A stretch of 64,000 nt of DNA from positions 70,346 to 134,345 of the forward strand of contig CDMY01000286.1 in the NCBI GenBank assembly GCA_001179505.1, in the 5' to 3' direction. How positions within the stretch are numbered: position 1 is the first letter of the stretch; each line of letters starts with the position of its first letter. The stretch comes from Vitrella brassicaformis CCMP3155 (Eukaryota > Protista > Chromerida). The notes under the pieces were generated by a model. It ran no database searches. It was not told the origin of the DNA and saw only the letters and a program-made list of their open reading frames with translations. Positions 16,644-59,348 of the stretch are shown piece by piece. The position numbers and the translations under genes were made by a program.

Positions 16644-18553
16644 CTACTCCTCTGTAGGCGCCTCCGTCGTGGTCGGGAAATCCGTCGTCGTCGGAGCCTC
16701 CGTGGGGGTCCATTTGCAGTCGACGCACGTGACGGCGGTCAGTGCGTTGAGCTGGCCCCCCGTCACGCACAGGCCCTCGAGCGAGTCCATCTTCTCGGAA
16801 GTCGACAGAATGCGATGCTTGATGTCGCGAAAGCTCTGCGTCGGGTCCATCGACCACAGAAGGGCAGCCAAACCTGAAGTCACAGAGAAACAAACAGTCG
16901 ATTGGAATGCCTAACTGGGGACATCACATAGCATCCCTCAGTGCTTCCATGCCTACCAGCCACGAAGGGCGTTGCCATGCTGGTGCCCCGCATTGCCTCA
17001 TACTTGCCACCCGGCACCGTCGAGGCGATTTTCGTCCCCGGCGCAAAGACGTCGACACTCCTGAGGCCGTAATTGCTGAAGGACGCCTTCTCGCCGTCCT
17101 CATTCGTCGCGCCGACGCTGATGATACTGTCCAGCTCATACGATGAGGGGTAGTGTTTCATGTCGCCGTCATTGTCGTTGTCGGTGTTGCCAGCTGCGGC
17201 GACGAACAGCATGTTGGCCTCCTCTGCCTTCCTGATAGCCGCCTCGAGCGCCCTGTTTGGAGCAGAGCGGACCATTCCCCCCCAGCCGTTGCTTGTGAGG
17301 GTGGCCCCCATGGCAACCGCATAGTTGATCGCCTGGATGGCGTCAGAAGTAGAACCTCGACCACCCTGATGAAAAGGCACAGGCATGTGATTTAAGTGCT
17401 CGGCAACCCTCCATTTGCTCGACTTACGCAGAGGAATTTGAGTGCCATGATCGTTGTTCTGCCAAAGGCGACACCTGCGATGCCTGCGATGCCCTCTTGG
17501 TTGTTGGCGGTGGCCGCTATGACAGACAGACAGACAGACAGACAGATGTTTATGCAATGTGTGTGCAGAGATGGCAGCATGCTTATTCATTCACTCACCG
17601 ATCGTTCCAGCAGAGTGGGTGCCTGTGCGGCCATCCTTCTCCATAGGATCGCCGTCACCCGTTGGCGGGCTGCTTGATCCGTCGCACCAAGCCCAGCCGT
17701 GAATGTCATCAATGAAGCCGTTACCTGCACACAGACACATACAGACGCAGGAATGCATGCAGATCGTGTGTGTGTGGATGTCCCTCCCTGTTGCCTCCCT
17801 CCCTCCCATCACCCCTCCCTCCCTACCGTCGTCATCGATGCCGTTGCCAGCGATCTCGCCTTGATTGACCCACATGGCGTCCTTGAGGTCCGGGTGATTG
17901 TAGTCGACACCGCCGTCAATCACCCCGACCACCGTAGTACCATTGCCCACTGAGTCGGCCCCACTGTCCGTCTCCTGCTGCTGCTCAGACAGGAAGGCCC
18001 ACGCCTCGGGCATATCGATGCTGGCCATCCCCCACTGCTCCTCAAAGACTGGGTCGTTGGGCAGCCATCGGTCCTGTGCTGCCGCGGGGCGCTGTAGCCT
18101 GCGAACAGAAGTCGGCGCAACAAGGGCATCCGGCTCGCAGACGTCGATCTCATCCGACGCCAGGAGGGCGGCCTCGCATGTGGCCGCTGCATCGACACCT
18201 GGCGGCAGATCCACCACGTCCATGGCCAAGCTGTTGAGGTGGTGGATTGTCGTCTCAGCCGTGTACACGGTGGTCTCGGCTGACAGGGCGGCCTGCAGTG
18301 CCCTCGAGATGCCTCCCGCTCGAACGAGGCCGTCGGTGTGTGCTGACTTGAGCTTCACGATGATGCGGTTGGTGCCGGTTGCCGCTGGACGCGATGGCGG
18401 ACTGCTGAGGGCACGGACAGTCCCAGCTCCATCACCACTCACCAGGCTGAATGTGCTGTAGGACACCACAGGGGTCTTGTTTGCAGAGCACTGACTGGCC
18501 ACCAGGGACAGGGCGACCAGCAGAGTCCACACGATTCCCGCAAGCTGAGCCAT
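16644..18553 (-). CDS. Secreted subtilisin-like (S8) protein with propeptide and Thr-rich tail; canonical catalytic His replaced
   Basis: Signal peptide MAQLAGIVWTLLVALSLVASQCSA and I9-like propeptide. Asp motif VIDGGVDYNHPDL, GRTGTHSAGTI where GHGTH is expected, oxyanion AAAGN and GTSMATPFVAG. Tail TTEAPTTTDFPTTTEAPTEE; about 5 exons. Confidence 0.9.
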
Positions 18554-19056
18554 TGCCTGCCGACGATAGATAACAGGACGATAGAGAGCGATGATCAAGT
18601 CGTCGAGGAAGGATCAAGGTGACGATGCGAAGAGAGGGCGAGGGAAGTGGGAAGTAGGTAGACTGGAAGGTGGAAAGTGAAGATCTGCACAGATCTGGTA
18701 TGGGACAGGTCAGGAGGGAGGGATGGATGGGGAGGGAGGGAGGGAGGGAGGGAGGGAGAGGAGGGATAGACTCCATAGGTTTCGCGCCATGGGTTAGGAA
18801 TGTACGCGGCACTTTTAATTGAACTGGGCTAATGCACAAAGCTTCCGCTCGCCTTATCTCGCTGCGGGGAGAAGGAGAGATGGGGAGGAGGGAGGGAAGG
18901 AGAGAGACCCCAGAGAGACCCCAGCGTTTGCACCGGTCTGCATCAACCACAGATCTTCACCTCCCGCCTTCTCGCCTTCTACTTCGCCTTCTCAGCGACT
19001 CCTGTCTGTTTCGCTGCACCCAAAGCATCACCACTCTCGATTGTCTGTTATCATCC

Positions 19057-19404
19057 ATGGCTCTCTTCTCCCGCCTGACGCTCTTCGTCCTCGCCGCTCT
19101 GCTGGTGGCGACCAGCATGGCCCAGGAGTGCGTGACGGACTCCGACTGCCCGTCTGGCGAGGTCTGCTACACGGATGATTCGGACGACAGGTGGTGCAAG
19201 ACAGAGGATGACTGGAACACAGCCGGTACGCAACTGCTCACGCCCTGAGCGGCATGCATCCCTATCTCTCTTTGTGCTGTTATGTGGCGTACAGGGTTGC
19301 TGTTATTGCTGGTGTTGGCGTATCTAGCGCACTACTGGTGGGTGGTGGTTCTTGTGCTTTGTGCTGTTGTTGCGTTGATTATTGTGTGTTGCTGCGGACG
19401 GTAG
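19057..19404 (+). CDS. Small Cys-rich type-I membrane protein (Shisa-like architecture), copy 1, with premature stop relative to its paralogue
   Basis: MALFSRLTLFVLAALLVATSMA|QECVTDSDCPSGEVC..RWC, a phase-1 intron (about 19227-19294), then TM LLLLLVLAYLAHYWWVVVLVLCAVVALIIVCCCGR*. TAG at 19402 stands where the paralogue has AAG, and RSPRVQTMPM/YVSSQPAPMP homology continues after the stop. Confidence 0.7.
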
Positions 19405-19796
19405 CGCTCGCCAAGAGTGCAAACCATGCCAATGTGAGCGAGCCAAAGGAATGGCTGAACAAACAAAGCCATCAAGGTTCCTTGGGGTGTGTGTTGTGTT
19501 GTGTTGTGTTCAGGTACGTGTCGTCTCAGCCAGCCCCAATGCCCGCCGTTCCTTCGTTCCACCCCACACCCTGCCTGCAGTTCACTCAGTACCCGTCTGC
19601 CCGCCTGGGATGTGTCGTGTGCTGTGCTGTGCTGTGCTGGGTGTGCGTCACTGTTCTTTCATTAAGCGTGTTGGTAAATAGATACGTGTGCGCGCGTGTG
19701 TGTGTGTGTGTGATGCGTCTGCACTGCATCGTCCTGCCCTTGGCCTGTTGTGGGTCTGTACTGAGTCTCTGTTCATCGCAGAGATGAGACTGAATC

Positions 19797-20471
19797 GTCC
19801 GGATGGGTGTAGTCGACACCGGTGTCAATCACCCCGACCACCGTACCTTTGCCCACTGAGTCGGCCCCACTGGCCGTCTCGTGCTGCTGCTCAGACAGGA
19901 AGGCCCACGCCTCGGGCATATCGATGCTGGCCATCCCCCACTGCTCCTTGAAGATTGGGTCGTCGGGCACGAAGCGGTTGGGCTCCTGTGCTGCCCGGGC
20001 GCGCAGCCTGCGGCCAGAGGCCGTCGTCACAACGGCATCCGGCTCGCAGATGTCGATCTCATCCGACGCCAGGAGGGCGGCCTCGCATGTGGCCGCTGCA
20101 TCGACACCTGGCGGCAGATCCACCACGTCCATGGACAAGCTGTTGAGGTGGTGGACCGTCGTCTCAGCCGTGTGCACGTTGGTCTCGGCTGACAGAGAGG
20201 CCTGCAGTGCCCTCGAGATGGTCTCTGCGCGGGCAAAGCCCTCGGTGTGTGGGTGCTTGAGCTTGACGATGATGCGGTGGATGCCAGCTGCAGCAGCAGG
20301 ACGCGTTGGCGGACTGGTGAGGGCACGGACACTCGGCTGGTCGTGTGCAGCTCCATCACTCAACAGGCTGAATGTGCTGTAGGAAACCACGGGTGTCTTG
20401 CTTGAGGGCTGACTGGCCACCAGGGACAGGGCGACCAGCAGAGTCCACACGATTCCCGCAGGCTGACCCAT
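19797..20471 (-). pseudogene. 3'-truncated subtilisin paralogue (signal peptide, propeptide and catalytic Asp motif only)
   Basis: MGQPAGIVWTLLVAL... closely matches the 18553 gene up to VIDTGVDYTHPD. It then runs into the 3' trailer of the 19057 gene and stops (DSVSSLR*). Confidence 0.85.
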
Positions 20472-20893
20472 TGCCTGCCGACGATAGATAACAGGACGAT
20501 AGAGAGCGATGATCAAGTCGTCGGTGAAGGATGAAGGTGATGATGCGAAGAGAGAGGGCGAGGCAAGAGTAGATCACTCGGAAGGTTCGAAGCGGAAAGT
20601 GAAGATCTGAGACGATATCTGCGAGATAGAGGGAGAGAGAGAGAGAGGAATGGGTGGATGAATGGATGGACGGAAGGGAGGGAGGGATGAGGAGTTAGAG
20701 CAGGGAGAGGGAGGAATCCATGAAACCGCCGGAGGGATGGAGGCATCTCCTCATTCCCACCACCATCAGCACTGTTCAACCGCAGATCTTCACCTCCCGC
20801 CTTTTCTTCTTCTCCCGACTCGCTCCCTCTGTCATCTCCGCTGCACCCAAGAGCATCAACCACTCAACCACTCTCGATTGTCTGTCATCGTCC

Positions 20894-21481
20894 ATGGCTC
20901 TGTTCTCGCGCCTGACGCTCTTCGTGACCCTCGCCGCTCTGCTGATGGCGACCAGCATGGCCCAGGAGTGCGTGACGGACTCTGACTGCTCGGATGATGA
21001 CTTCCCCTACTGCGTGAAGTTTGATGATGGAGAAAGGCGGTGCCAACATGTGGACTGTGCACATCCGACGATTTGGGGGTGTTCGGATGACGACGATGAC
21101 GACGATACCAACTGTAACCACATGAAGACAGAGAGCTTACTGGGCGTCAGTCAGTCATCCCTATTCCTCCCTCCTGTTCTGCTGTGTGGCGTGTCAGGGT
21201 GGTTAATTGCCATCATAGTGCTGGTAATTGTTCTTCCGGTTTGTGGCGTTGTTGCGTTGATTATTGCGTGTTGCACATGTTGGGCGGCGCGGAAGCCCGC
21301 GCCGAGAGTGGTGATGATACAACCAAGGCCAATGTGAGACAGCAAAACGAACAAACAGGGCACACTGCAACACGCATCCATCATCGTGTGTGCCGCCATC
21401 AACTGTGTCGTTCGTTGGTGTGTGTGTTTTGTTTTCAGGTACGTGCCCTCCCAGCCAGCTCCAACTCCCGCCTGTGTGTAG
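20894..21481 (+). CDS. Small Cys-rich type-I membrane protein (Shisa-like architecture), copy 2
   Basis: Signal peptide, 6-Cys ectodomain ECVTDSDC..YC..RRC..DC..GC and 84-nt phase-1 intron 21114-21197. Then TM WLIAIIVLVIVLPVCGVVALIIACCTC and Pro-rich tail ...IQPRPM/YVPSQPAPTPACV*. Confidence 0.75.
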
Positions 21482-21840
21482 GCCCGGCTACCACTGCAAG
21501 CACGGGAAATGTAAGTGTGGCAGTTCCACAGGCAGACAGACACACACGCGTGCCCATCGTCAGTTCACATGCCCTCTCTCCGTGTCATGTGTGCTGCGTT
21601 CAGGCTTGCTTCTCCAGACTGCATTCGTCTGTCTGTCTGCCTGTGATTATGTGTCCGTCACTGGTCTTTCATCAAGTGTGTCGACAGATGCGAGTCCATG
21701 TGTGTGTGCGTGTGTACAGAACTGATCTGCCTTGCTGTGCGTATGCGTGTATATGTGATGCGTCTGCACTGGATATATAGTCCGACTGGCGTGCGGCGCC
21801 CTGCCCTTTGGCTGTGTGACATGTGGTGGTTTACTCGTGT

Positions 21841-55315: not shown

Positions 55316-55824
55316 GTGTCATCGGCCACCTTTGTAGCTGGTGCTGTATGTGTTCGCTATGTGTACCAATACAGCAGGTAGGCTGACGGATGGATGACTG
55401 GCTGACGAGACAGCGGTTGAGGGCCGTCAGTAGCTCACGGTCGACCAGGTACGATGCGATGCAGACAGGCTACCGCTGCTGCCTTGGTGTGTGTCGGTCG
55501 ACAGTTGAACCATTTCATCGTGTAAAGAGACCACGAATGACCCGATGCGGCATGTGTCGTGACGATTCATGGTGATACATTTGTTCGTTCGTTCGTTTGT
55601 GTCCACCCAATGTGTCGGTGCCACTTGATCCCTCCCACAGCAAAGAGAAATGCACTACAAATATGCGACAAAAGGTGTACTGCACAACAGACAGGGCTCC
55701 TACTTATTGAAGTGAGTGACAAATGACCGTATACGACTGGTGTGTGGGTGTCATGCCTGCCACATCCACACACACACACATCCACACACACCCACACCCA
55801 CACCACGCAACATCCACTCCTCTC

Positions 55825-56215
55825 TCAGTCCAGACAGCACACAAGCACACCACACCCATGATATGAACCCTGTTCCCCTCCGGTTATTGTTTTCTTCCCC
55901 GTGTGGCATGTACATGGTGAAGTCAAAAACAAGAACACAGTTCACAATGCACTGACACCACAAGCACACAAGCACGCCACACCCGATATGACATAAACCC
56001 GGCTGGCCCTTCTCCCTTGCCCCTCCCCCGCGCGCGTATCCATCTACATGGTGAAGTCAAAAACAAAAGCACAATTAATTCGCAATGCACTCTCTCTCAG
56101 CCCAGACAGCACACAAGCAAAGCGTACCCGATATGATATGGAACCGGTGTCCCCCCAACCCGCGTGTCTTTCTGCATGGTGAAGTCAAAAACAAAACACA
56201 ATGCACTGACAGGCT
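55825..56215. repeat. Three diverged ~133-bp tandem units
   Basis: Core 'catggtgaagtcaaaaacaa..acac..caatgcact' at about 55912, 56046 and 56175. Confidence 0.8.
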
Positions 56216-56465
56216 GACAAAGGGCAGGACACACACCGCACCAGACGCCCTCAGACTATGCAGTGCAGACGCATCACACACACAACAAGGAAGGCTCTAG
56301 ACACACATACACACAATAAACACACATGTATGTCTCTCTCTGCAATCTTAATGAAAGAACAGTGACGCACACACCACACGCAGACGAGTGGCTCAATCGA
56401 ACCGGTGGCCTGAAAGAAACCAACACACAGACATGGACGCCCGGTGTCCTTCAGTCTCACTTACA

Positions 56466-57056
56466 TCAGTCATGGTGGTGGTGATGGTGGTGGTGGTGGC
56501 GGTGCCCACGGCGCCAGCGACCACGACCCCAGCGACCACGGCCCCAGCGACCACCACCCCAGCGACCACGACCCCAGCGACCACGACCCCAGCGGCCCCT
56601 ATGACGATGGCCGTGGTGGTGATGATGGCCCGAATGACCACGACGACCCCCACGACGACGGCCTGCACACGACAAAAACACAGAACCGAGGGATAGGGAT
56701 GATGCTCAGTGTCTGTCTGGTCAGAACAACGGTGGGAGTATTGCATGTGGGTGCTGACGTCGCTGAAGGGCACGCAGGTTGCCCGACTTCAGAGGCTCGT
56801 CCTCCGCCTCATCCTCGTCATCGTCATCATCCTCATCATCGGCCAGATCCGCCTCGTCGGCATCGACCAGGGCGTCCTCCTCGTCGTCGAGCAGCTCATC
56901 CACAGTCGCCAGGGCATTGTCAGATTCATCAAGAGCAACAACAGTGGGAGCAGCAGTCGTGGCGGAGGGTGGCTGGGCCATGGTGGCTGAGGGCGTCCAA
57001 ACCGCCACCAGGAGAGCGGCCAGGGCCAAGAGCGTCAGGCGCGAGAAGAGAGCCAT
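56466..57056 (-). CDS. 164-aa secreted precursor: signal peptide, acidic pro-region, RAL site and Arg/Gly/Trp/His-rich cationic peptide (2 exons)
   Basis: Exon 1 (57056-56759) reads MALFSRLTLL..DDEDDDDDEDEAEDE..NLRALQR. A 96-nt phase-1 intron (gtcagc..gtgcag) precedes exon 2 (56662-56466), RRRRGGRRGHSGHHHHHGHRHRGRW(GRGRW)...RRGHRHHHHHHHHHD*. Confidence 0.8.
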
Positions 57057-57202
57057 GGATGATAACAGACAATCGAGCAGGCGGGATTGACAGATGGCAA
57101 GAGTCGGCTGAGGCAGGAGTGGATAGATGGGAGAGAGAGCCAAAACGAATGGGAGGGGAGGGATGGCTTCGAAGTTGTCAAAACGCAAAGGATCGCTTTT
57201 GC

Positions 57203-57228
57203 AGCGGTTTCAGGGAGCACCCTAGGCG
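57203..57228. promoter_or_regulatory. 26-bp element identical to 63916-63941
   Basis: agcggtttcagggagcaccctaggcg, containing AGGG-AGCA-CCCT, upstream of a minus-strand ATG at both sites. Confidence 0.55.
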
Positions 57229-57719
57229 AGCTACCCCTTCGTCGCGAGAAGGAAGGGCTGAGTTTGCCGCACATTGGTAAGGCCAGGCGCTGGTGCCAGT
57301 GGCACGTATTTGTCGACAGATGATAGATGGATGGATGCCTCAACTGTCTTGTGTCAACTTGTCTTGTGTGACTCTGTCATCATGCAGGCTGCGGTCATAT
57401 TGGGTGCTCTTATTCATCGCTTGTTTCTGCGAGTGTGCCTGAAGCGACTACGTCCACGTCTGCCTGAAGGAATCATCAAGAATGGCCTCACGAGCACCTG
57501 TGGAATGACGGAGTCTTTCTGTCTGCATGATGGTGTGCAGACAAGACGCACTACCGCCTTCTCTCTCACCTACCTGTTGAGCATCGCGGATATCCGTTGA
57601 GTAACGTAATTCAGGTACGGATGCATGGCACTGATGTGATGATGGAAAGCGAGAAGATGGGAAGCCCTTCATGCACGTGTGCGTTGCCTTTGGTGTGGTA
57701 CTTGCTGCAGATCATAAGG

Positions 57720-59348
57720 ATGGCCGTCCGTTCGTCAACCGCAGCCGATCAGCAGCAGCAGCAGCAGCAGCAGCAGGCGGCAGTGATCGAGGCCATCAAG
57801 ATGCAGATTCACTTCCGTCCCGGCTCCAATGAGGAGGTCAAGAAGCTCACCCGTCGGCTCGTCGGCAGAATCATGAATCGCAGCATTACTCCTGACGGTG
57901 TGCGGCGCCTTGTTCGCCGCGTCGCTGATCCCACCGTGACCATCGAGCTGTCTTCCGTATCGGGGGTGGCGCTCGTGTGTCTGCTCGCGTTGGCCATCGA
58001 CGACTTCAGCTCCCCCACTGCGCTGGAGTCGGCGCTCCAGCTATGGCCTTCCTTCATGCCCCCGGGTCGGCTGGTGCTCCCATTGTGGCCAAGCCGTCAG
58101 ATCCAGGCGGGCATCATCAACGCGCTGGTCGACGAGGGCGCAGATGTCGATGGGCTGGTGGGGGGGAGCAAGCGCCCCGTGGAGGTGGCGGTGCGGGCGG
58201 GCAACGCGATGGGAGTGAGGACCCTCGTGGGCACACATGGGGCGGAGGTGTACGGCATGGGGCTGCTGCATGTGCCGTACGAGATCCGGGTGGCGACCGA
58301 GCAGTACGAGGATGCCCTGATCGACATCTTCGGCTACCTCCTGGAGCAAGACCCCGACTTGGCGACGGAGACCGATGTGACGGGCAACGATGTCGTGCAC
58401 TCGGCAGCCGGGGCGGGTCATGTCTACTCCCGGGGCTTCATCGAGGCCTACCTGGACCTGGTGACGGCCAACGGGGCGACCCTGACCCACGTGGGGCATG
58501 CTGGGAGGACGGCACTGCACACCGCTTGTGTGTTCTCAGCACACCATGTGGTCGAGTACCTGTGCGACAACCTCACACCCGCCGACATCAACGCCACGGA
58601 CAACGGCATAGTGCTGCCGCCGCAGACCCCTCTTGTCTGTGCTGCCGGGAGCGTCGCCCGGCTTGCCGATCCACATAGGCCCATCTTGGTGTACGAGAAC
58701 CGTGACAAGGCGATAGAGGGCATGAAGGGGGCGGTCCGCACCTTGCTGCGGTCGGGGGCAGCGATCGGTGTGATGCCCACCGCGGCGCGTCGTGTGGCGT
58801 TGGATCAGTACGTCAAGGTGCTGAATGCGCTGCCCACGGCCGTCATGGGAGCCATCAACGCCGCCCTGACCCCCCAGCGCTCCCTCGCCGCTGTCATCAC
58901 GCCCCGGCTGGCCGTCGGCCCGAACGAGGCGCCCATCTTCGGCTGGTGCATCGCATCTTACCTGTTCGACATGGATGCCGCCAAGGCGGGCATCAGTGAG
59001 GCCATCGGTGTGCGGGGCAGCGACCTGGCCCGCCGTGTGTGTGCGGCTGCGCAACATTTCGTCGAGTCGGCTGTGTACAAGGCCAGCAGCAACATGGAGG
59101 TGGTGCGCCACAAGGAGAGTGTGGAGGGCGAGATGGTGCGGGTGCCCCTGCAGTGCTTCGCCATGAGGGCCGGGTCGAGGGTGCGTCGGCTGGGGGTGCG
59201 TGAGGTGGTGCACAAGGCGCGGCTGCACGAGGTGGCGGCACACGGGCTGCAGGGCGTGGTCAAAGGGTTCAACACCCACCTGGGCAACACCGACTGCGTG
59301 TTCCAGTGGGGACAGCTGGGATGGGCGGATGCCAGCGGCCGCCACTAA
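57720..59348 (+). CDS. Intronless ankyrin-repeat protein with polyQ N-terminus and lineage-specific C-terminal domain
   Basis: Uninterrupted ORF with RPVEVAVRAGN, DVVHSAAGAG and RTALHTACVFSAHHVVEYLCDNLTPADIN. C-terminus PLQCFAM..VREVVHKARL..GVVKGFNTHLG. Confidence 0.85.
   Translation: MAVRSSTAADQQQQQQQQQAAVIEAIKMQIHFRPGSNEEVKKLTRRLVGRIMNRSITPDGVRRLVRRVADPTVTIELSSVSGVALVCLLALAIDDFSSPTALESALQLWPSFMPPGRLVLPLWPSRQIQAGIINALVDEGADVDGLVGGSKRPVEVAVRAGNAMGVRTLVGTHGAEVYGMGLLHVPYEIRVATEQYEDALIDIFGYLLEQDPDLATETDVTGNDVVHSAAGAGHVYSRGFIEAYLDLVTANGATLTHVGHAGRTALHTACVFSAHHVVEYLCDNLTPADINATDNGIVLPPQTPLVCAAGSVARLADPHRPILVYENRDKAIEGMKGAVRTLLRSGAAIGVMPTAARRVALDQYVKVLNALPTAVMGAINAALTPQRSLAAVITPRLAVGPNEAPIFGWCIASYLFDMDAAKAGISEAIGVRGSDLARRVCAAAQHFVESAVYKASSNMEVVRHKESVEGEMVRVPLQCFAMRAGSRVRRLGVREVVHKARLHEVAAHGLQGVVKGFNTHLGNTDCVFQWGQLGWADASGRH

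What the first reader, a model, noticed from the sequence alone, without database searches (positions are those of the whole stretch)
56466..57056. Secreted precursor with acidic pro-region, RxL site and a (GRGRW)n / poly-His cationic peptide
Seen: splicing the 96-nt phase-1 intron gives a signal peptide, a region with 28 Asp/Glu in residues 43-87, LRALQ and then a 66-aa tail with 22 Arg, 18 His and 6 Trp. The Trp residues sit in 15-nt GRGRW repeats bracketed by His5 and His9 runs. Repeat variation is synonymous in this frame (ggt/ggc, cat/cac) but non-synonymous in the alternative Val/Thr frame, which supports this frame as the selected one. Known: an acidic propiece that neutralises a cationic peptide is typical of antimicrobial-peptide precursors and of diatom silaffin/cingulin precursors cut at RxL, and Gly/His-rich proteins bind metals and harden biomaterials. 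Inference: a pH- or metal-switchable antimicrobial, adhesive or wall-building peptide that I do not recognise as described in this lineage.
Basis: partly seen in the sequence, partly recalled or inferred. Interest (0 to 1): 0.82.

Follow-up and report, generated by a model that had tools for sequence, protein, structure and literature searches.

The report
Unannotated secreted cationic-peptide precursor gene
The alga Vitrella brassicaformis, a free-living relative of malaria parasites, carries an unannotated small gene from a private family. Its product looks like a secreted precursor in which an acidic stretch masks a very basic Arg/Gly/His/Trp peptide that would be cut free at a conserved Arg-x-Leu site, but expression, cutting and activity are all untested.

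Summary
The features are real. On the minus strand a 298-nt first exon encodes a signal peptide, 28 Asp/Glu in residues 43-87, and SGNLRALQR. A 96-nt GT-AG phase-1 intron follows. A 197-nt exon then encodes a Cys-free tail with 22 Arg, 18 His and 6 Trp, in six 15-nt GRGRW units between His5 and His9.

The organism is Vitrella brassicaformis. The gene's product is absent from public protein sets, but it belongs to a tiny private family:
- Two annotated paralogs share the leader, acidic pro-region, LRAL and the same homologous phase-1 intron, spliced in a transcript contig. They then encode Cys-rich Lys/Arg/Trp peptides.
- A metagenomic homolog keeps the whole Arg/Gly/His/Trp architecture.
- In all four, pro-region negative charge tracks product positive charge.

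This supports a prepropeptide cut at Arg-x-Leu. An antimicrobial role is inference.

Weak points:
- dN/dS is near 1.

This scan has already noted the acidic-RxL-basic layout in other Vitrella families on other DNA.

The parts
56759..57056 (-). Exon 1 (298 nt): start codon, signal peptide, acidic pro-region, SGNLRALQR, plus the first base of a split Arg codon.
   Evidence: It is 53% and 45% identical to the paralogs P0001 and P0002 over its whole length.
56976..57056 (-). Signal peptide, residues 1-27 (n-region MALFSR, h-region of 14 residues with mean Kyte-Doolittle 2.6, c-region TPSATMA).
   Evidence: The first nine residues are invariant across the three aligned prepro sequences. The same nine-residue start opens L004 and the two other window genes; P0004 differs at one residue (MALFSRLKL). 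No SignalP run was possible.
56796..56930 (-). Acidic core of the pro-region, residues 43-87, with 28 Asp/Glu.
   Evidence: Net charge of residues 28-99 is -25.
56766..56786 (-). SGNLRAL, the conserved Arg-x-Leu motif at the end of the pro-region; candidate cleavage site.
   Evidence: S, G, L, R, A, L are invariant in the alignment with P0001 and P0002. The motif is identical in L004 and reads LRGL in P0004.
56663..56758 (-). Intron 1, 96 nt, GT..AG, phase 1.
   Evidence: It aligns with the phase-1 introns of P0001 and P0002, with invariant GT and GTGCAG|G. The P0001 intron is removed in transcript contig L002.
56466..56662 (-). Exon 2 coding part: Arg/Gly/His/Trp tail, with the stop at 56468-56466.
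   Evidence: It is 95.3% identical to the L004 exon with the same architecture.
56506..56594 (-). 15-nt tandem array encoding the (G/R)RGRW units.
56613..56627 (-). His5 run.
56472..56498 (-). His9 run.
56410..56464 (-). Probable 55-nt intron in the 3'UTR. Its donor T|GTAAGT lies one base after the stop.
   Evidence: It is homologous to the phase-1 intron after the Cys-module exons of P0001 and P0002 and 94% identical in L004. The next exon still reads like the last coding exon of P0002. Not verified by RNA.
56347..56368 (-). 22-nt 3'UTR motif shared by the family.
   Evidence: In the window it occurs only downstream of the three leader-family genes; no match in any shuffle. It is also seen in L003 and, with changes, in L001 and L004.
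55548..55865 (-). Downstream stretch present in a transcriptome contig, possibly a long 3'UTR of this gene.
   Evidence: The 3' end of L002 follows the window here, where L001 and L003 diverge. BLAST gives 99.1% over 332 nt. The contig is an assembly chimera with the P0001 mRNA.

Best explanation
This is a real but unannotated gene of Vitrella brassicaformis. It belongs to a small lineage-specific family of secreted prepropeptides.

Shown:
- Exon 1 encodes a 27-residue signal peptide and an anionic pro-region that ends in the family-conserved SG(N/S)LRAL.
- A phase-1 intron, homologous to that of the paralogs, joins it to the exon for the product.
- In the paralogs the product is a Cys-rich, Lys/Arg/Trp/His-rich mini-protein. 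Here that module is replaced by a Cys-free 66-residue Arg/Gly/His/Trp peptide, built largely from a 15-nt repeat and ended by a stop one base before the next conserved splice donor.

Inferred:
- The acidic stretch neutralises the basic peptide during passage through the secretory pathway.
- An endoprotease cuts at or just after Arg-x-Leu. The protease is unknown; a plasmepsin V/ASP5-like aspartyl protease or a subtilisin are the candidates.
- The freed peptide would start at Gln and could be trimmed at the Arg run. It would act outside the cell, most likely as a membrane-active defence or competition peptide.
- Its 18 His would raise the charge from about +20 to about +35 between pH 7 and pH 5, and could bind metals.
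For: Anatomy.

Family:
- Word searches and an exhaustive profile search of 1.84 billion representatives find only P0001, P0002, P0003 and P0004.
- Three are Vitrella CCMP3155 proteins and one is a metagenomic ORF.
- The leader, acidic block and LRAL are conserved.

Splicing:
- The phase-1 intron sits at the homologous place, with alignable intron sequence and invariant GT and GTGCAG|G.
- The P0001 junctions are confirmed by transcript contig L002.

Homolog L004 keeps both exons, both introns, the stop position, six Trp units and the His runs. All three indels are multiples of 3.

Charge (pro-region / product):
- Window gene: -25 / +19, or +20 with the split-codon Arg.
- L004: -28 / +23.
- P0001: -15 / +13.
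- P0002: -9 / +6.

Other points:
- Tail charge rises from 20.6 at pH 7 to 35.4 at pH 5.
- DNA downstream of the gene is present in a transcriptome contig in the sense orientation.

Literature:
- Alpha-defensins typically pair an anionic propeptide with a cationic mature peptide of counterbalanced charge (PMC2803202).
- RXL is regarded as a potential proteolytic site in diatom frustule proteins (PMC9650480).
- Short Arg/Trp peptides permeabilise bacterial membranes (PMC13019373).
- PEXEL/TEXEL RxL motifs are cut by plasmepsin V/ASP5 in apicomplexans (PMC8540915, PMC10900883).
Against:
- No product of this gene, whole or partial, is in the protein collections. Exon-1 queries covered lengths 54-271 aa and the tail query 35-112 aa. 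The JGI transcriptome that holds P0001 therefore did not yield it.
- Against L004, introns are as conserved as exon 2 and more conserved than exon 1.
- Exon 1 has 20 nonsynonymous against 7 synonymous codon changes, so pN is about equal to pS. Exon 2 has 6 against 3.
- Keeping the frame open is not improbable by chance: P about 0.44 for exon 1 and 0.81 for exon 2.
- Substitution patterns do not favour the Arg frame over the Val frame.
- Cleavage, secretion and activity are untested.
- Unlike its paralogs, this gene has no subtilisin-like sequence within about 36 kb; those detected by similarity lie at 16686-20666.
Confidence: 0.5

Rival explanations
1. It is a decaying or neutrally drifting family copy. 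The Cys-module exon was overwritten by an expanding GC-rich 15-nt microsatellite, a stop cut off the ancestral last exon, and the open frame is kept only because GC-rich repeats rarely make stops. No functional peptide is made.
For: - pN is about equal to pS in exon 1, and exon 2 has 6 nonsyn / 3 syn.
- Introns are as conserved as exons.
- Two sense frames and both long antisense frames are open through the repeat.
- Chance retention of the frame is plausible.
- The gene is absent from annotation and from transcript-derived proteins.
- The ancestral last exon is now untranslated.
Against: - Two homologs about 5-12% apart keep the start codon, signal peptide, LRALQR, all four splice dinucleotides, the stop position, six Trp units and the His runs.
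- All three indels are in frame.
- All replacements in the tail stay within Gly/Arg/His.
- The acidic charge rises together with the tail charge in L004.
- dN/dS near 1 is usual for defence and toxin peptides (established knowledge).
- Downstream DNA is transcribed.
Confidence: 0.2
2. It is a secreted structural, adhesive or metal-handling protein rather than a defence peptide. The Gly/His/Arg/Trp block would bind Zn, Ni or Cu, or wall polysaccharide, or would coacervate with the protein's own acidic block. It would help build or harden the thick sporangial wall, with or without cleavage at RxL.
For: - There are 18 His in runs of 5 and 9, plus 18 Gly.
- The diblock polyampholyte layout is -25 / +20.
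- An RXL motif after a signal peptide occurs in diatom wall proteins (PMC9650480).
- The relative P0004 is membrane-anchored and carries a His/Asp/Glu-rich stretch.
Against: - The closest paralogs encode small Cys-knotted cationic peptides, not wall-type repeats.
- The tail has no Lys, one Ser, and no Pro or Tyr, which are typical of silaffins, cingulins or extensin-like proteins.
- The product is only 66 residues.
- Nothing links it to the wall.
Confidence: 0.17
3. The true product is read in another frame or strand: a Val/Ala/Thr-rich hydrophobic segment (ORF 56393..56773, minus) or the 278-aa antisense ORF 56444..57280 (plus).
For: - Both ORFs are open.
- The Val frame shows 5 syn / 4 nonsyn against L004, nominally better than the Arg frame.
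- Other family members have a hydrophobic exon after the module.
Against: - The Val frame needs a phase-0 junction. The only GT at the homologous donor and the only AG at the acceptor give phase 1, as in the paralogs, one of which is confirmed by cDNA.
- The unspliced exon-1 frame stops at once in L004 and after 12 codons here.
- The antisense ORF shrinks from 278 to 166 aa in L004 and has no start context or family.
Confidence: 0.03

Closest known systems
Vitrella brassicaformis paralogs P0001 (145 aa, Dickkopf_N hit) and P0002 (113 aa) on contig CDMY01000400.1
   Same: Same signal peptide, acidic pro-region, SG(N/S)LRAL, homologous phase-1 intron, symmetric 1-1 product exon, next-intron donor T|GTAAGT and 3'UTR motif. 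The products are cationic and contain Trp and His.
   Different: Their products are built on C-x5-C-x5-C-xn-C modules (8 and 4 Cys). This gene has no Cys and a repeat-built Arg/Gly/His/Trp tail with no detectable nucleotide similarity to the module exons. It also has two extra codons (QR) before the donor and a stop before the last ancestral exon. A subtilisin gene lies about 2 kb from each paralog but not from this gene.
Metagenomic homolog L004 (ENA ERZ893784, contig k147_4753463; ORF P0003)
   Same: Same whole architecture: leader, acidic region, LRALQR, phase-1 intron, tail with His5, six Trp units and a terminal His run, and a stop one base before GTAAGT. About 87% nucleotide identity over window 57077..56150.
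   Different: The split codon is Gly, not Arg. Four Gly-to-Arg changes, one Arg-to-Gly and one His-to-Arg. The His run is two residues shorter and the acidic region eight residues longer. The 5' flank is not collinear with the window. Ortholog or paralog is undecided.
Cationic antimicrobial-peptide precursors with an anionic propiece (alpha-defensin type)
   Same: Signal peptide, anionic propiece and cationic product with roughly balanced charges (PMC2803202).
   Different: No sequence or fold relationship, no Cys, a different lineage, and an RxL instead of the animal processing sites. Activity is unknown.
Linear Arg/Trp-rich and Gly/His-rich antimicrobial peptides (indolicidin, tritrpticin, synthetic RW repeats; shepherins, histatins: from my own knowledge, plus PMC13019373 for Arg/Trp peptides)
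   Same: Composition: alternating Arg and Trp with Gly spacers, and His-rich stretches that would give pH- and metal-dependent charge.
   Different: Much longer than typical RW peptides. There is no homology: Pfam, the word search and the Atlas were all blank. The resemblance is compositional only.
Diatom silaffin/cingulin-type precursors with RXL sites
   Same: N-terminal signal peptide, an RXL motif before the product, and a low-complexity charged product (PMC9650480).
   Different: The tail has no Lys and one Ser, so it lacks KXXK/Ser-rich silaffin chemistry. Vitrella is not known to make silica (my own knowledge). There is no homology.
PEXEL/TEXEL substrates of plasmepsin V / ASP5 in Apicomplexa
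   Same: An Arg-x-Leu motif in a signal-peptide protein of a close free-living relative of apicomplexans. The motif is conserved across family members while its surroundings vary (PMC8540915, PMC10900883).
   Different: The motif here is RALQR, with RALGH, RALGP and RGLKP in relatives. That is neither RxLxE/Q/D nor RRL. It lies about 68 residues after the signal-peptide cut. No protease was identified here.

Membership tests
Vitrella MALFSRL-leader prepropeptide family (P0001, P0002, L004) | Conserved signal peptide beginning MALFSRLTL. | tested here: met
   The first nine residues are invariant. 44 invariant columns in the three-way alignment. Profile search E-values 8e-43 to 1e-13 for the four members found.
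Vitrella MALFSRL-leader prepropeptide family (P0001, P0002, L004) | Acidic pro-region ending in SG(N/S)LRAL. | tested here: met
Vitrella MALFSRL-leader prepropeptide family (P0001, P0002, L004) | Phase-1 intron directly after the RxL motif, with homologous intron sequence. | tested here: met
   In silico only for this gene. The equivalent P0001 junction is confirmed by transcript contig L002. The donor here lies two codons further 3'.
Vitrella MALFSRL-leader prepropeptide family (P0001, P0002, L004) | Product built on a four-Cys module (Dickkopf_N-like). | tested here: not met
   0 Cys in the tail, no Pfam hit and no nucleotide similarity to the module exons. The gene is a member by its prepro part and gene structure, not by its product.
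Vitrella MALFSRL-leader prepropeptide family (P0001, P0002, L004) | Shared 3'UTR motif. | tested here: met
   Exact 22-nt match at 56347-56368. It is found only at the three family genes in the window.
Anionic-propiece cationic antimicrobial-peptide precursors (alpha-defensin type) | Signal peptide + anionic propiece + cationic product with counterbalanced charge. | tested here: met
   -25 against +20 here, and the balance co-varies in four family genes.
Anionic-propiece cationic antimicrobial-peptide precursors (alpha-defensin type) | Six-Cys defensin fold or sequence homology. | tested here: not met
   No Cys, and no Pfam family at E up to 10 for the tail.
Anionic-propiece cationic antimicrobial-peptide precursors (alpha-defensin type) | Antimicrobial activity of the released peptide. 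| not testable with these tools
   Needs synthetic peptide assays.
Diatom silaffin/cingulin-type precursors | Signal peptide followed by an RXL motif. | tested here: met
   The motif is present (RAL, residues 95-97). Cleavage is not testable here.
Diatom silaffin/cingulin-type precursors | Lys/Ser-rich (KXXK) or Tyr/Trp-rich cingulin-type product domains. | tested here: not met
   0 Lys, 1 Ser, 0 Tyr in the tail.
Diatom silaffin/cingulin-type precursors | Association with biosilica. | not testable with these tools
   No localisation data.
PEXEL/TEXEL substrates (plasmepsin V / ASP5) | RxLxE/Q/D or RRLxx consensus. | tested here: not met
   RALQR here; RALGH, RALGP and RGLKP in relatives. Only the RxL core is shared.
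PEXEL/TEXEL substrates (plasmepsin V / ASP5) | Cleavage after Leu by a clade-D aspartyl protease. | not testable with these tools
   The Vitrella protease set was not searchable here. PMC8540915 includes Vitrella aspartyl proteases in its tree, but I did not verify a clade-D member.
Linear Arg/Trp-rich or Gly/His-rich antimicrobial peptides | Characteristic composition. | tested here: met
   The 64 residues encoded wholly by exon 2 comprise 20 Arg, 18 Gly, 18 His, 6 Trp, 1 Ser and 1 Asp.
Linear Arg/Trp-rich or Gly/His-rich antimicrobial peptides | Sequence relationship to a described peptide family. | tested here: not met
   Pfam blank, word search blank, Atlas blank, metagenome DNA pattern blank.

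The most novel reading that the evidence does not exclude
Arg-x-Leu cutting of secreted precursors is an ancestral, general maturation step in chromerids. Apicomplexan parasites later turned the same step into PEXEL/TEXEL-dependent effector export. This gene and its paralogs would then be natural, non-parasitic substrates. Their acidic pro-regions would mask cationic defence peptides that are released outside the cell to control bacteria around the alga. The (GRGRW)6/poly-His peptide would be a new, repeat-born class of pH- and metal-tuned antimicrobial peptide from a protist.
Probability: 0.2. Interest if true: 0.75.

Novelty: new variant of a known kind. Interest (0 to 1): 0.5.

Why it matters
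- If the precursor is made and cut, Vitrella would offer a free-living model for the function of Arg-x-Leu processing before parasitism. It would come with simple, short and easily synthesised substrates.
- The family would show how a conserved leader/pro-region cassette is recombined with changing product exons in a protist. This pattern is known from animal toxins and defence peptides.
- The tail is an unusual natural sequence: six Arg/Trp units between two natural His tags. Its activity, metal binding and pH switch can be tested directly with a synthetic peptide.
- The gene is missing from the public annotation, so small repeat-rich secreted genes of this genome are probably under-counted.

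Tried and rejected
The junction is untested.
All searches were exon by exon, by reference. Exact look-ups of the full product in the protein and contig collections were therefore left out.
3. Pfam on both exons gave only sub-threshold low-complexity hits for exon 1 and nothing for exon 2.
4. Tail relatives: the word search at 35-112 aa, the ESM Atlas features and an exact 30-nt pattern in JGI metagenomes were all blank. These blanks do not cover longer proteins.
5. The search for related loci in JGI metagenomes with the prepro alignment found 198 pattern matches and no relative. That collection evidently lacks the transcriptome that holds L002.
6. It does not discriminate the frames.
7. Origin of exon 2 from the paralogs' Cys-module exons: local alignments are no better than shuffles. 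Rejected as unsupported.
8. Constraint from frame retention: the simulation shows that open frames are not surprising. Only the three in-frame indels add modest weight.
9. Amphipathic helix in the conserved acidic block: the hydrophobic moment is not significant (15% of shuffles reach it).
10. Plastid targeting was considered and rejected from the sequence. The stretch after the signal peptide turns strongly acidic within 15 residues, unlike transit peptides (inference).
11. Literature: no paper linking Vitrella with antimicrobial peptides describes this family.

Full report
**What is there**

The feature lies on the minus strand.
- An ATG at 57056 opens a 298-nt exon, 57056..56759.
- Its first 99 codons give MALFSR, a 14-residue hydrophobic core and TPSATMA. 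A short Pro/Ser/Thr/Ala stretch follows.
- Next comes a block with 18 Asp and 10 Glu in residues 43-87, and then PLKSGNLRALQR.
- The following base starts a split codon. GT at 56758-56757 and AG at 56664-56663 bound a 96-nt intron in phase 1.
- Exon 2 (56662..56466) completes an Arg codon. It then encodes 64 residues made of 20 Arg, 18 Gly, 18 His, 6 Trp, 1 Ser and 1 Asp, with a stop at 56468-56466.
- Tandem Repeats Finder reports a 15-nt unit, 5.9 copies and 91% matches at 56506-56594.
- A two-unit (30-nt) pattern taken from the array matched four overlapping positions, all inside it. No shuffle gave any match.
- His5 and His9 flank the array.

The spliced product was never joined in any tool, script output or note. 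Every search was done exon by exon, by reference.

**Organism and annotation**

- Exon 1 finds two proteins of Vitrella brassicaformis CCMP3155. They lie on contig CDMY01000400.1 of assembly GCA_001179505.1.
- No protein carrying this gene's own exon 1 appears at 54-173 aa or at 85-271 aa.
- No protein carrying its tail appears at 35-112 aa.
- So the gene is not annotated in the public sets within those lengths. The JGI transcriptome that yielded P0001 did not yield a product of this gene.

**A private family**

A profile of the prepro region was read against 1.84 billion representative proteins. It finds only four proteins.
- P0001 (145 aa) and P0002 (113 aa) share the leader, an acidic region and SG(N/S)LRAL. 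They then carry Cys-rich cationic peptides with Trp and His. P0001 passes the Pfam Dickkopf_N threshold.
- P0004 (267 aa, contig CDMY01000496.1) has the leader, a weaker acidic region, LRGL, Cys modules, a His/Asp/Glu-rich stretch and a membrane anchor.
- P0003 is a prokaryote-style ORF call on a 5.5-kb ENA metagenome contig, L004.
- Two further genes in the window, at 19057 and 20894 on the plus strand, share the leader exon and a 22-nt 3'UTR motif but have no acidic region.

**Support for the intron and the frame**

- In P0001 and P0002 a phase-1 intron follows LRAL directly.
- The P0001 junctions are confirmed by transcript contig L002. It matches the genome in four blocks, at 100% identity for exon 1 and 98.8-99.3% for the other three, with the introns removed.
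- Aligned, the four introns share the GT, internal blocks and GTGCAG|G. This gene and L004 differ by a 6-nt insertion (Gln-Arg) before the donor.
- The product exons of the paralogs are symmetric phase 1-1 exons ending in T|GTAAG.
- Exon 2 here is also a 198-nt 1-1 exon ending in T|GTAAGT, with the stop one base upstream.
- The next exon still resembles the last coding exon of P0002.
- Only the Arg frame fits these phases. The third sense frame has a stop. The Val/Ala/Thr frame would need a phase-0 junction that the sequence does not offer.
Within the array the differences score 4 syn / 3 nonsyn in the Arg frame against 3 / 4 in the Val frame. Against L004 the scores are 3 / 6 against 5 / 4.

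**The homolog L004**

- Over window 57077..56150 it is about 87% identical.
- It keeps the start, leader, LRALQR, a phase-1 GT..AG intron, the tail with His5, six Trp units, a terminal His run, the stop one base before GTAAGT, and the 3'UTR intron.
- Unspliced, its exon-1 frame stops at once.
- The three indels (15, 9 and 6 nt) are in frame.
- All six replacements in the tail are Gly/Arg or His/Arg exchanges.
- Constraint is nevertheless weak. Identity is 87.9% in exon 1, 93.8% in intron 1, 95.3% in exon 2 and 94.4% in intron 2.
- Exon 1 has 20 nonsynonymous and 7 synonymous codon differences, on about 221 and 76 sites respectively.
- Random substitutions would leave the frames open with probability 0.44 for exon 1 and 0.81 for exon 2.
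- This fits fast-evolving defence-type genes, gene conversion within the family, or a drifting copy. On gene conversion, the 5'UTR of L004 is closer to the gene at 19057 than to this gene.

**Charge balance**

| Gene | Pro-region net charge | Product net charge |
|---|---|---|
| Window gene | -25 | +19 (+20 with the split-codon Arg) |
| L004 | -28 | +23 |
| P0001 | -15 | +13 |
| P0002 | -9 | +6 |

- The two charges co-vary across all four genes.
- This is the pattern described for alpha-defensin precursors (PMC2803202). It is the best internal evidence that the acidic block exists to mask the basic product.
- With His titrated, the tail charge rises from 20.6 at pH 7 to 35.4 at pH 5.

**Expression**

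- The only indirect sign comes from the 3' end of transcript contig L002. It follows window 55865..55548 on the minus strand, where the P0001 and P0002 loci diverge.
- The contig is a chimera joined through a shared element. It shows that this downstream stretch is transcribed in the sense orientation, possibly as a long 3'UTR.
- It does not show the coding exons.

**Most likely mechanism**

- Shown: the gene structure, the family membership by leader, pro-region, motif and intron, and the charge balance.
- Inferred: co-translational entry into the ER; masking of the Arg/His/Trp peptide by the acidic block; endoproteolysis at the conserved Arg-x-Leu; release of a Gln-started, strongly cationic peptide.
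- Arg/Trp peptides permeabilise bacterial membranes (PMC13019373), so a defence or competition role is the best guess.
- RXL is regarded as a potential cleavage site in diatom wall proteins (PMC9650480).
- RxL-type motifs are cut by plasmepsin V/ASP5 in apicomplexans (PMC8540915, PMC10900883).
- The motif here (RALQR; RALGH, RALGP and RGLKP in relatives) matches only the RxL core of those consensus sequences.
- Subtilisin genes lie about 2 kb from both paralogs, and subtilisin-like sequence lies beside the other window members, but none lies beside this gene. A processing link is therefore only a lead.

**Comparison with the known, and novelty**

- By layout this is a cationic-peptide precursor with an anionic propiece.
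- By descent it belongs only to a Vitrella-specific family.
- Its product has no detectable relative and no similarity to the paralogs' module exons.
- I found no paper describing such a family in chromerids.
- Earlier notes of this scan, unchecked, report the same acidic-RxL-basic layout in several other Vitrella families on other DNA. As a theme, this gene is therefore one more case, although its tail is unusual.
- I rate it a new variant of a known kind, of moderate interest. It is limited by the missing RNA evidence and weak constraint.

Noticed in passing
window 19057-19700 (+) and 20894-21700 (+): Two more genes have the same MALFSRLTL signal-peptide exon and the same 22-nt 3'UTR motif. 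They lack an acidic pro-region. The leader runs straight into a C-x5-C-x5-C-xn-C module, followed by a hydrophobic, membrane-anchor-like exon.
   Followed up: partly
window 16686-18737 and 19797-20666 (-); L001 12614-14456; L003 12552-14457: Subtilisin (Peptidase_S8) genes or fragments alternate with leader-family genes. Each of P0001 and P0002 lies about 2 kb from a convergent 532-aa subtilisin gene. The pair seems to have been duplicated as a block, so a processing link is possible but untested.
   Followed up: partly
window 56347-56368 (-), 19645-19666 (+), 21655-21676 (+): A 22-nt motif (GCGTCACTGTTCTTTCATTAAG) is found in the window only in the 3'UTRs of the three leader-family genes. It is also seen in L003 and, with changes, in L001 and L004. 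It may be a shared regulatory or 3'-end element.
   Followed up: partly
window 55820-56283: Three to four diverged tandem copies (spacing 127-154 nt) of an element lie downstream of the gene. The element is single-copy in the 3' regions of P0001, P0002 and L004.
   Followed up: partly
L002 1-1224 (JGI 3300017148): The transcript contig is an assembly chimera. Positions 1-985 are the spliced P0001 mRNA. From about 910 onwards it follows window 55865..55548 (minus) rather than the P0001 locus.
   Followed up: partly
window 56444-57280 (+): A 278-aa antisense ORF covers the whole gene. It shrinks to 166 aa in L004 and is best read as a shadow ORF of GC-rich coding sequence.
   Followed up: partly
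window 57597-59348 (+): The neighbouring 583-aa ORF has ankyrin repeats (Ank_2, E 2e-8). No evident link to the finding.
   Followed up: no
L005 6001-7036 (P0004, CDMY01000496.1): A membrane-anchored relative has the same leader, LRGL without an intron after it, Cys modules, and a His/Asp/Glu-rich HEHPHEH-type stretch before the anchor.
   Followed up: no
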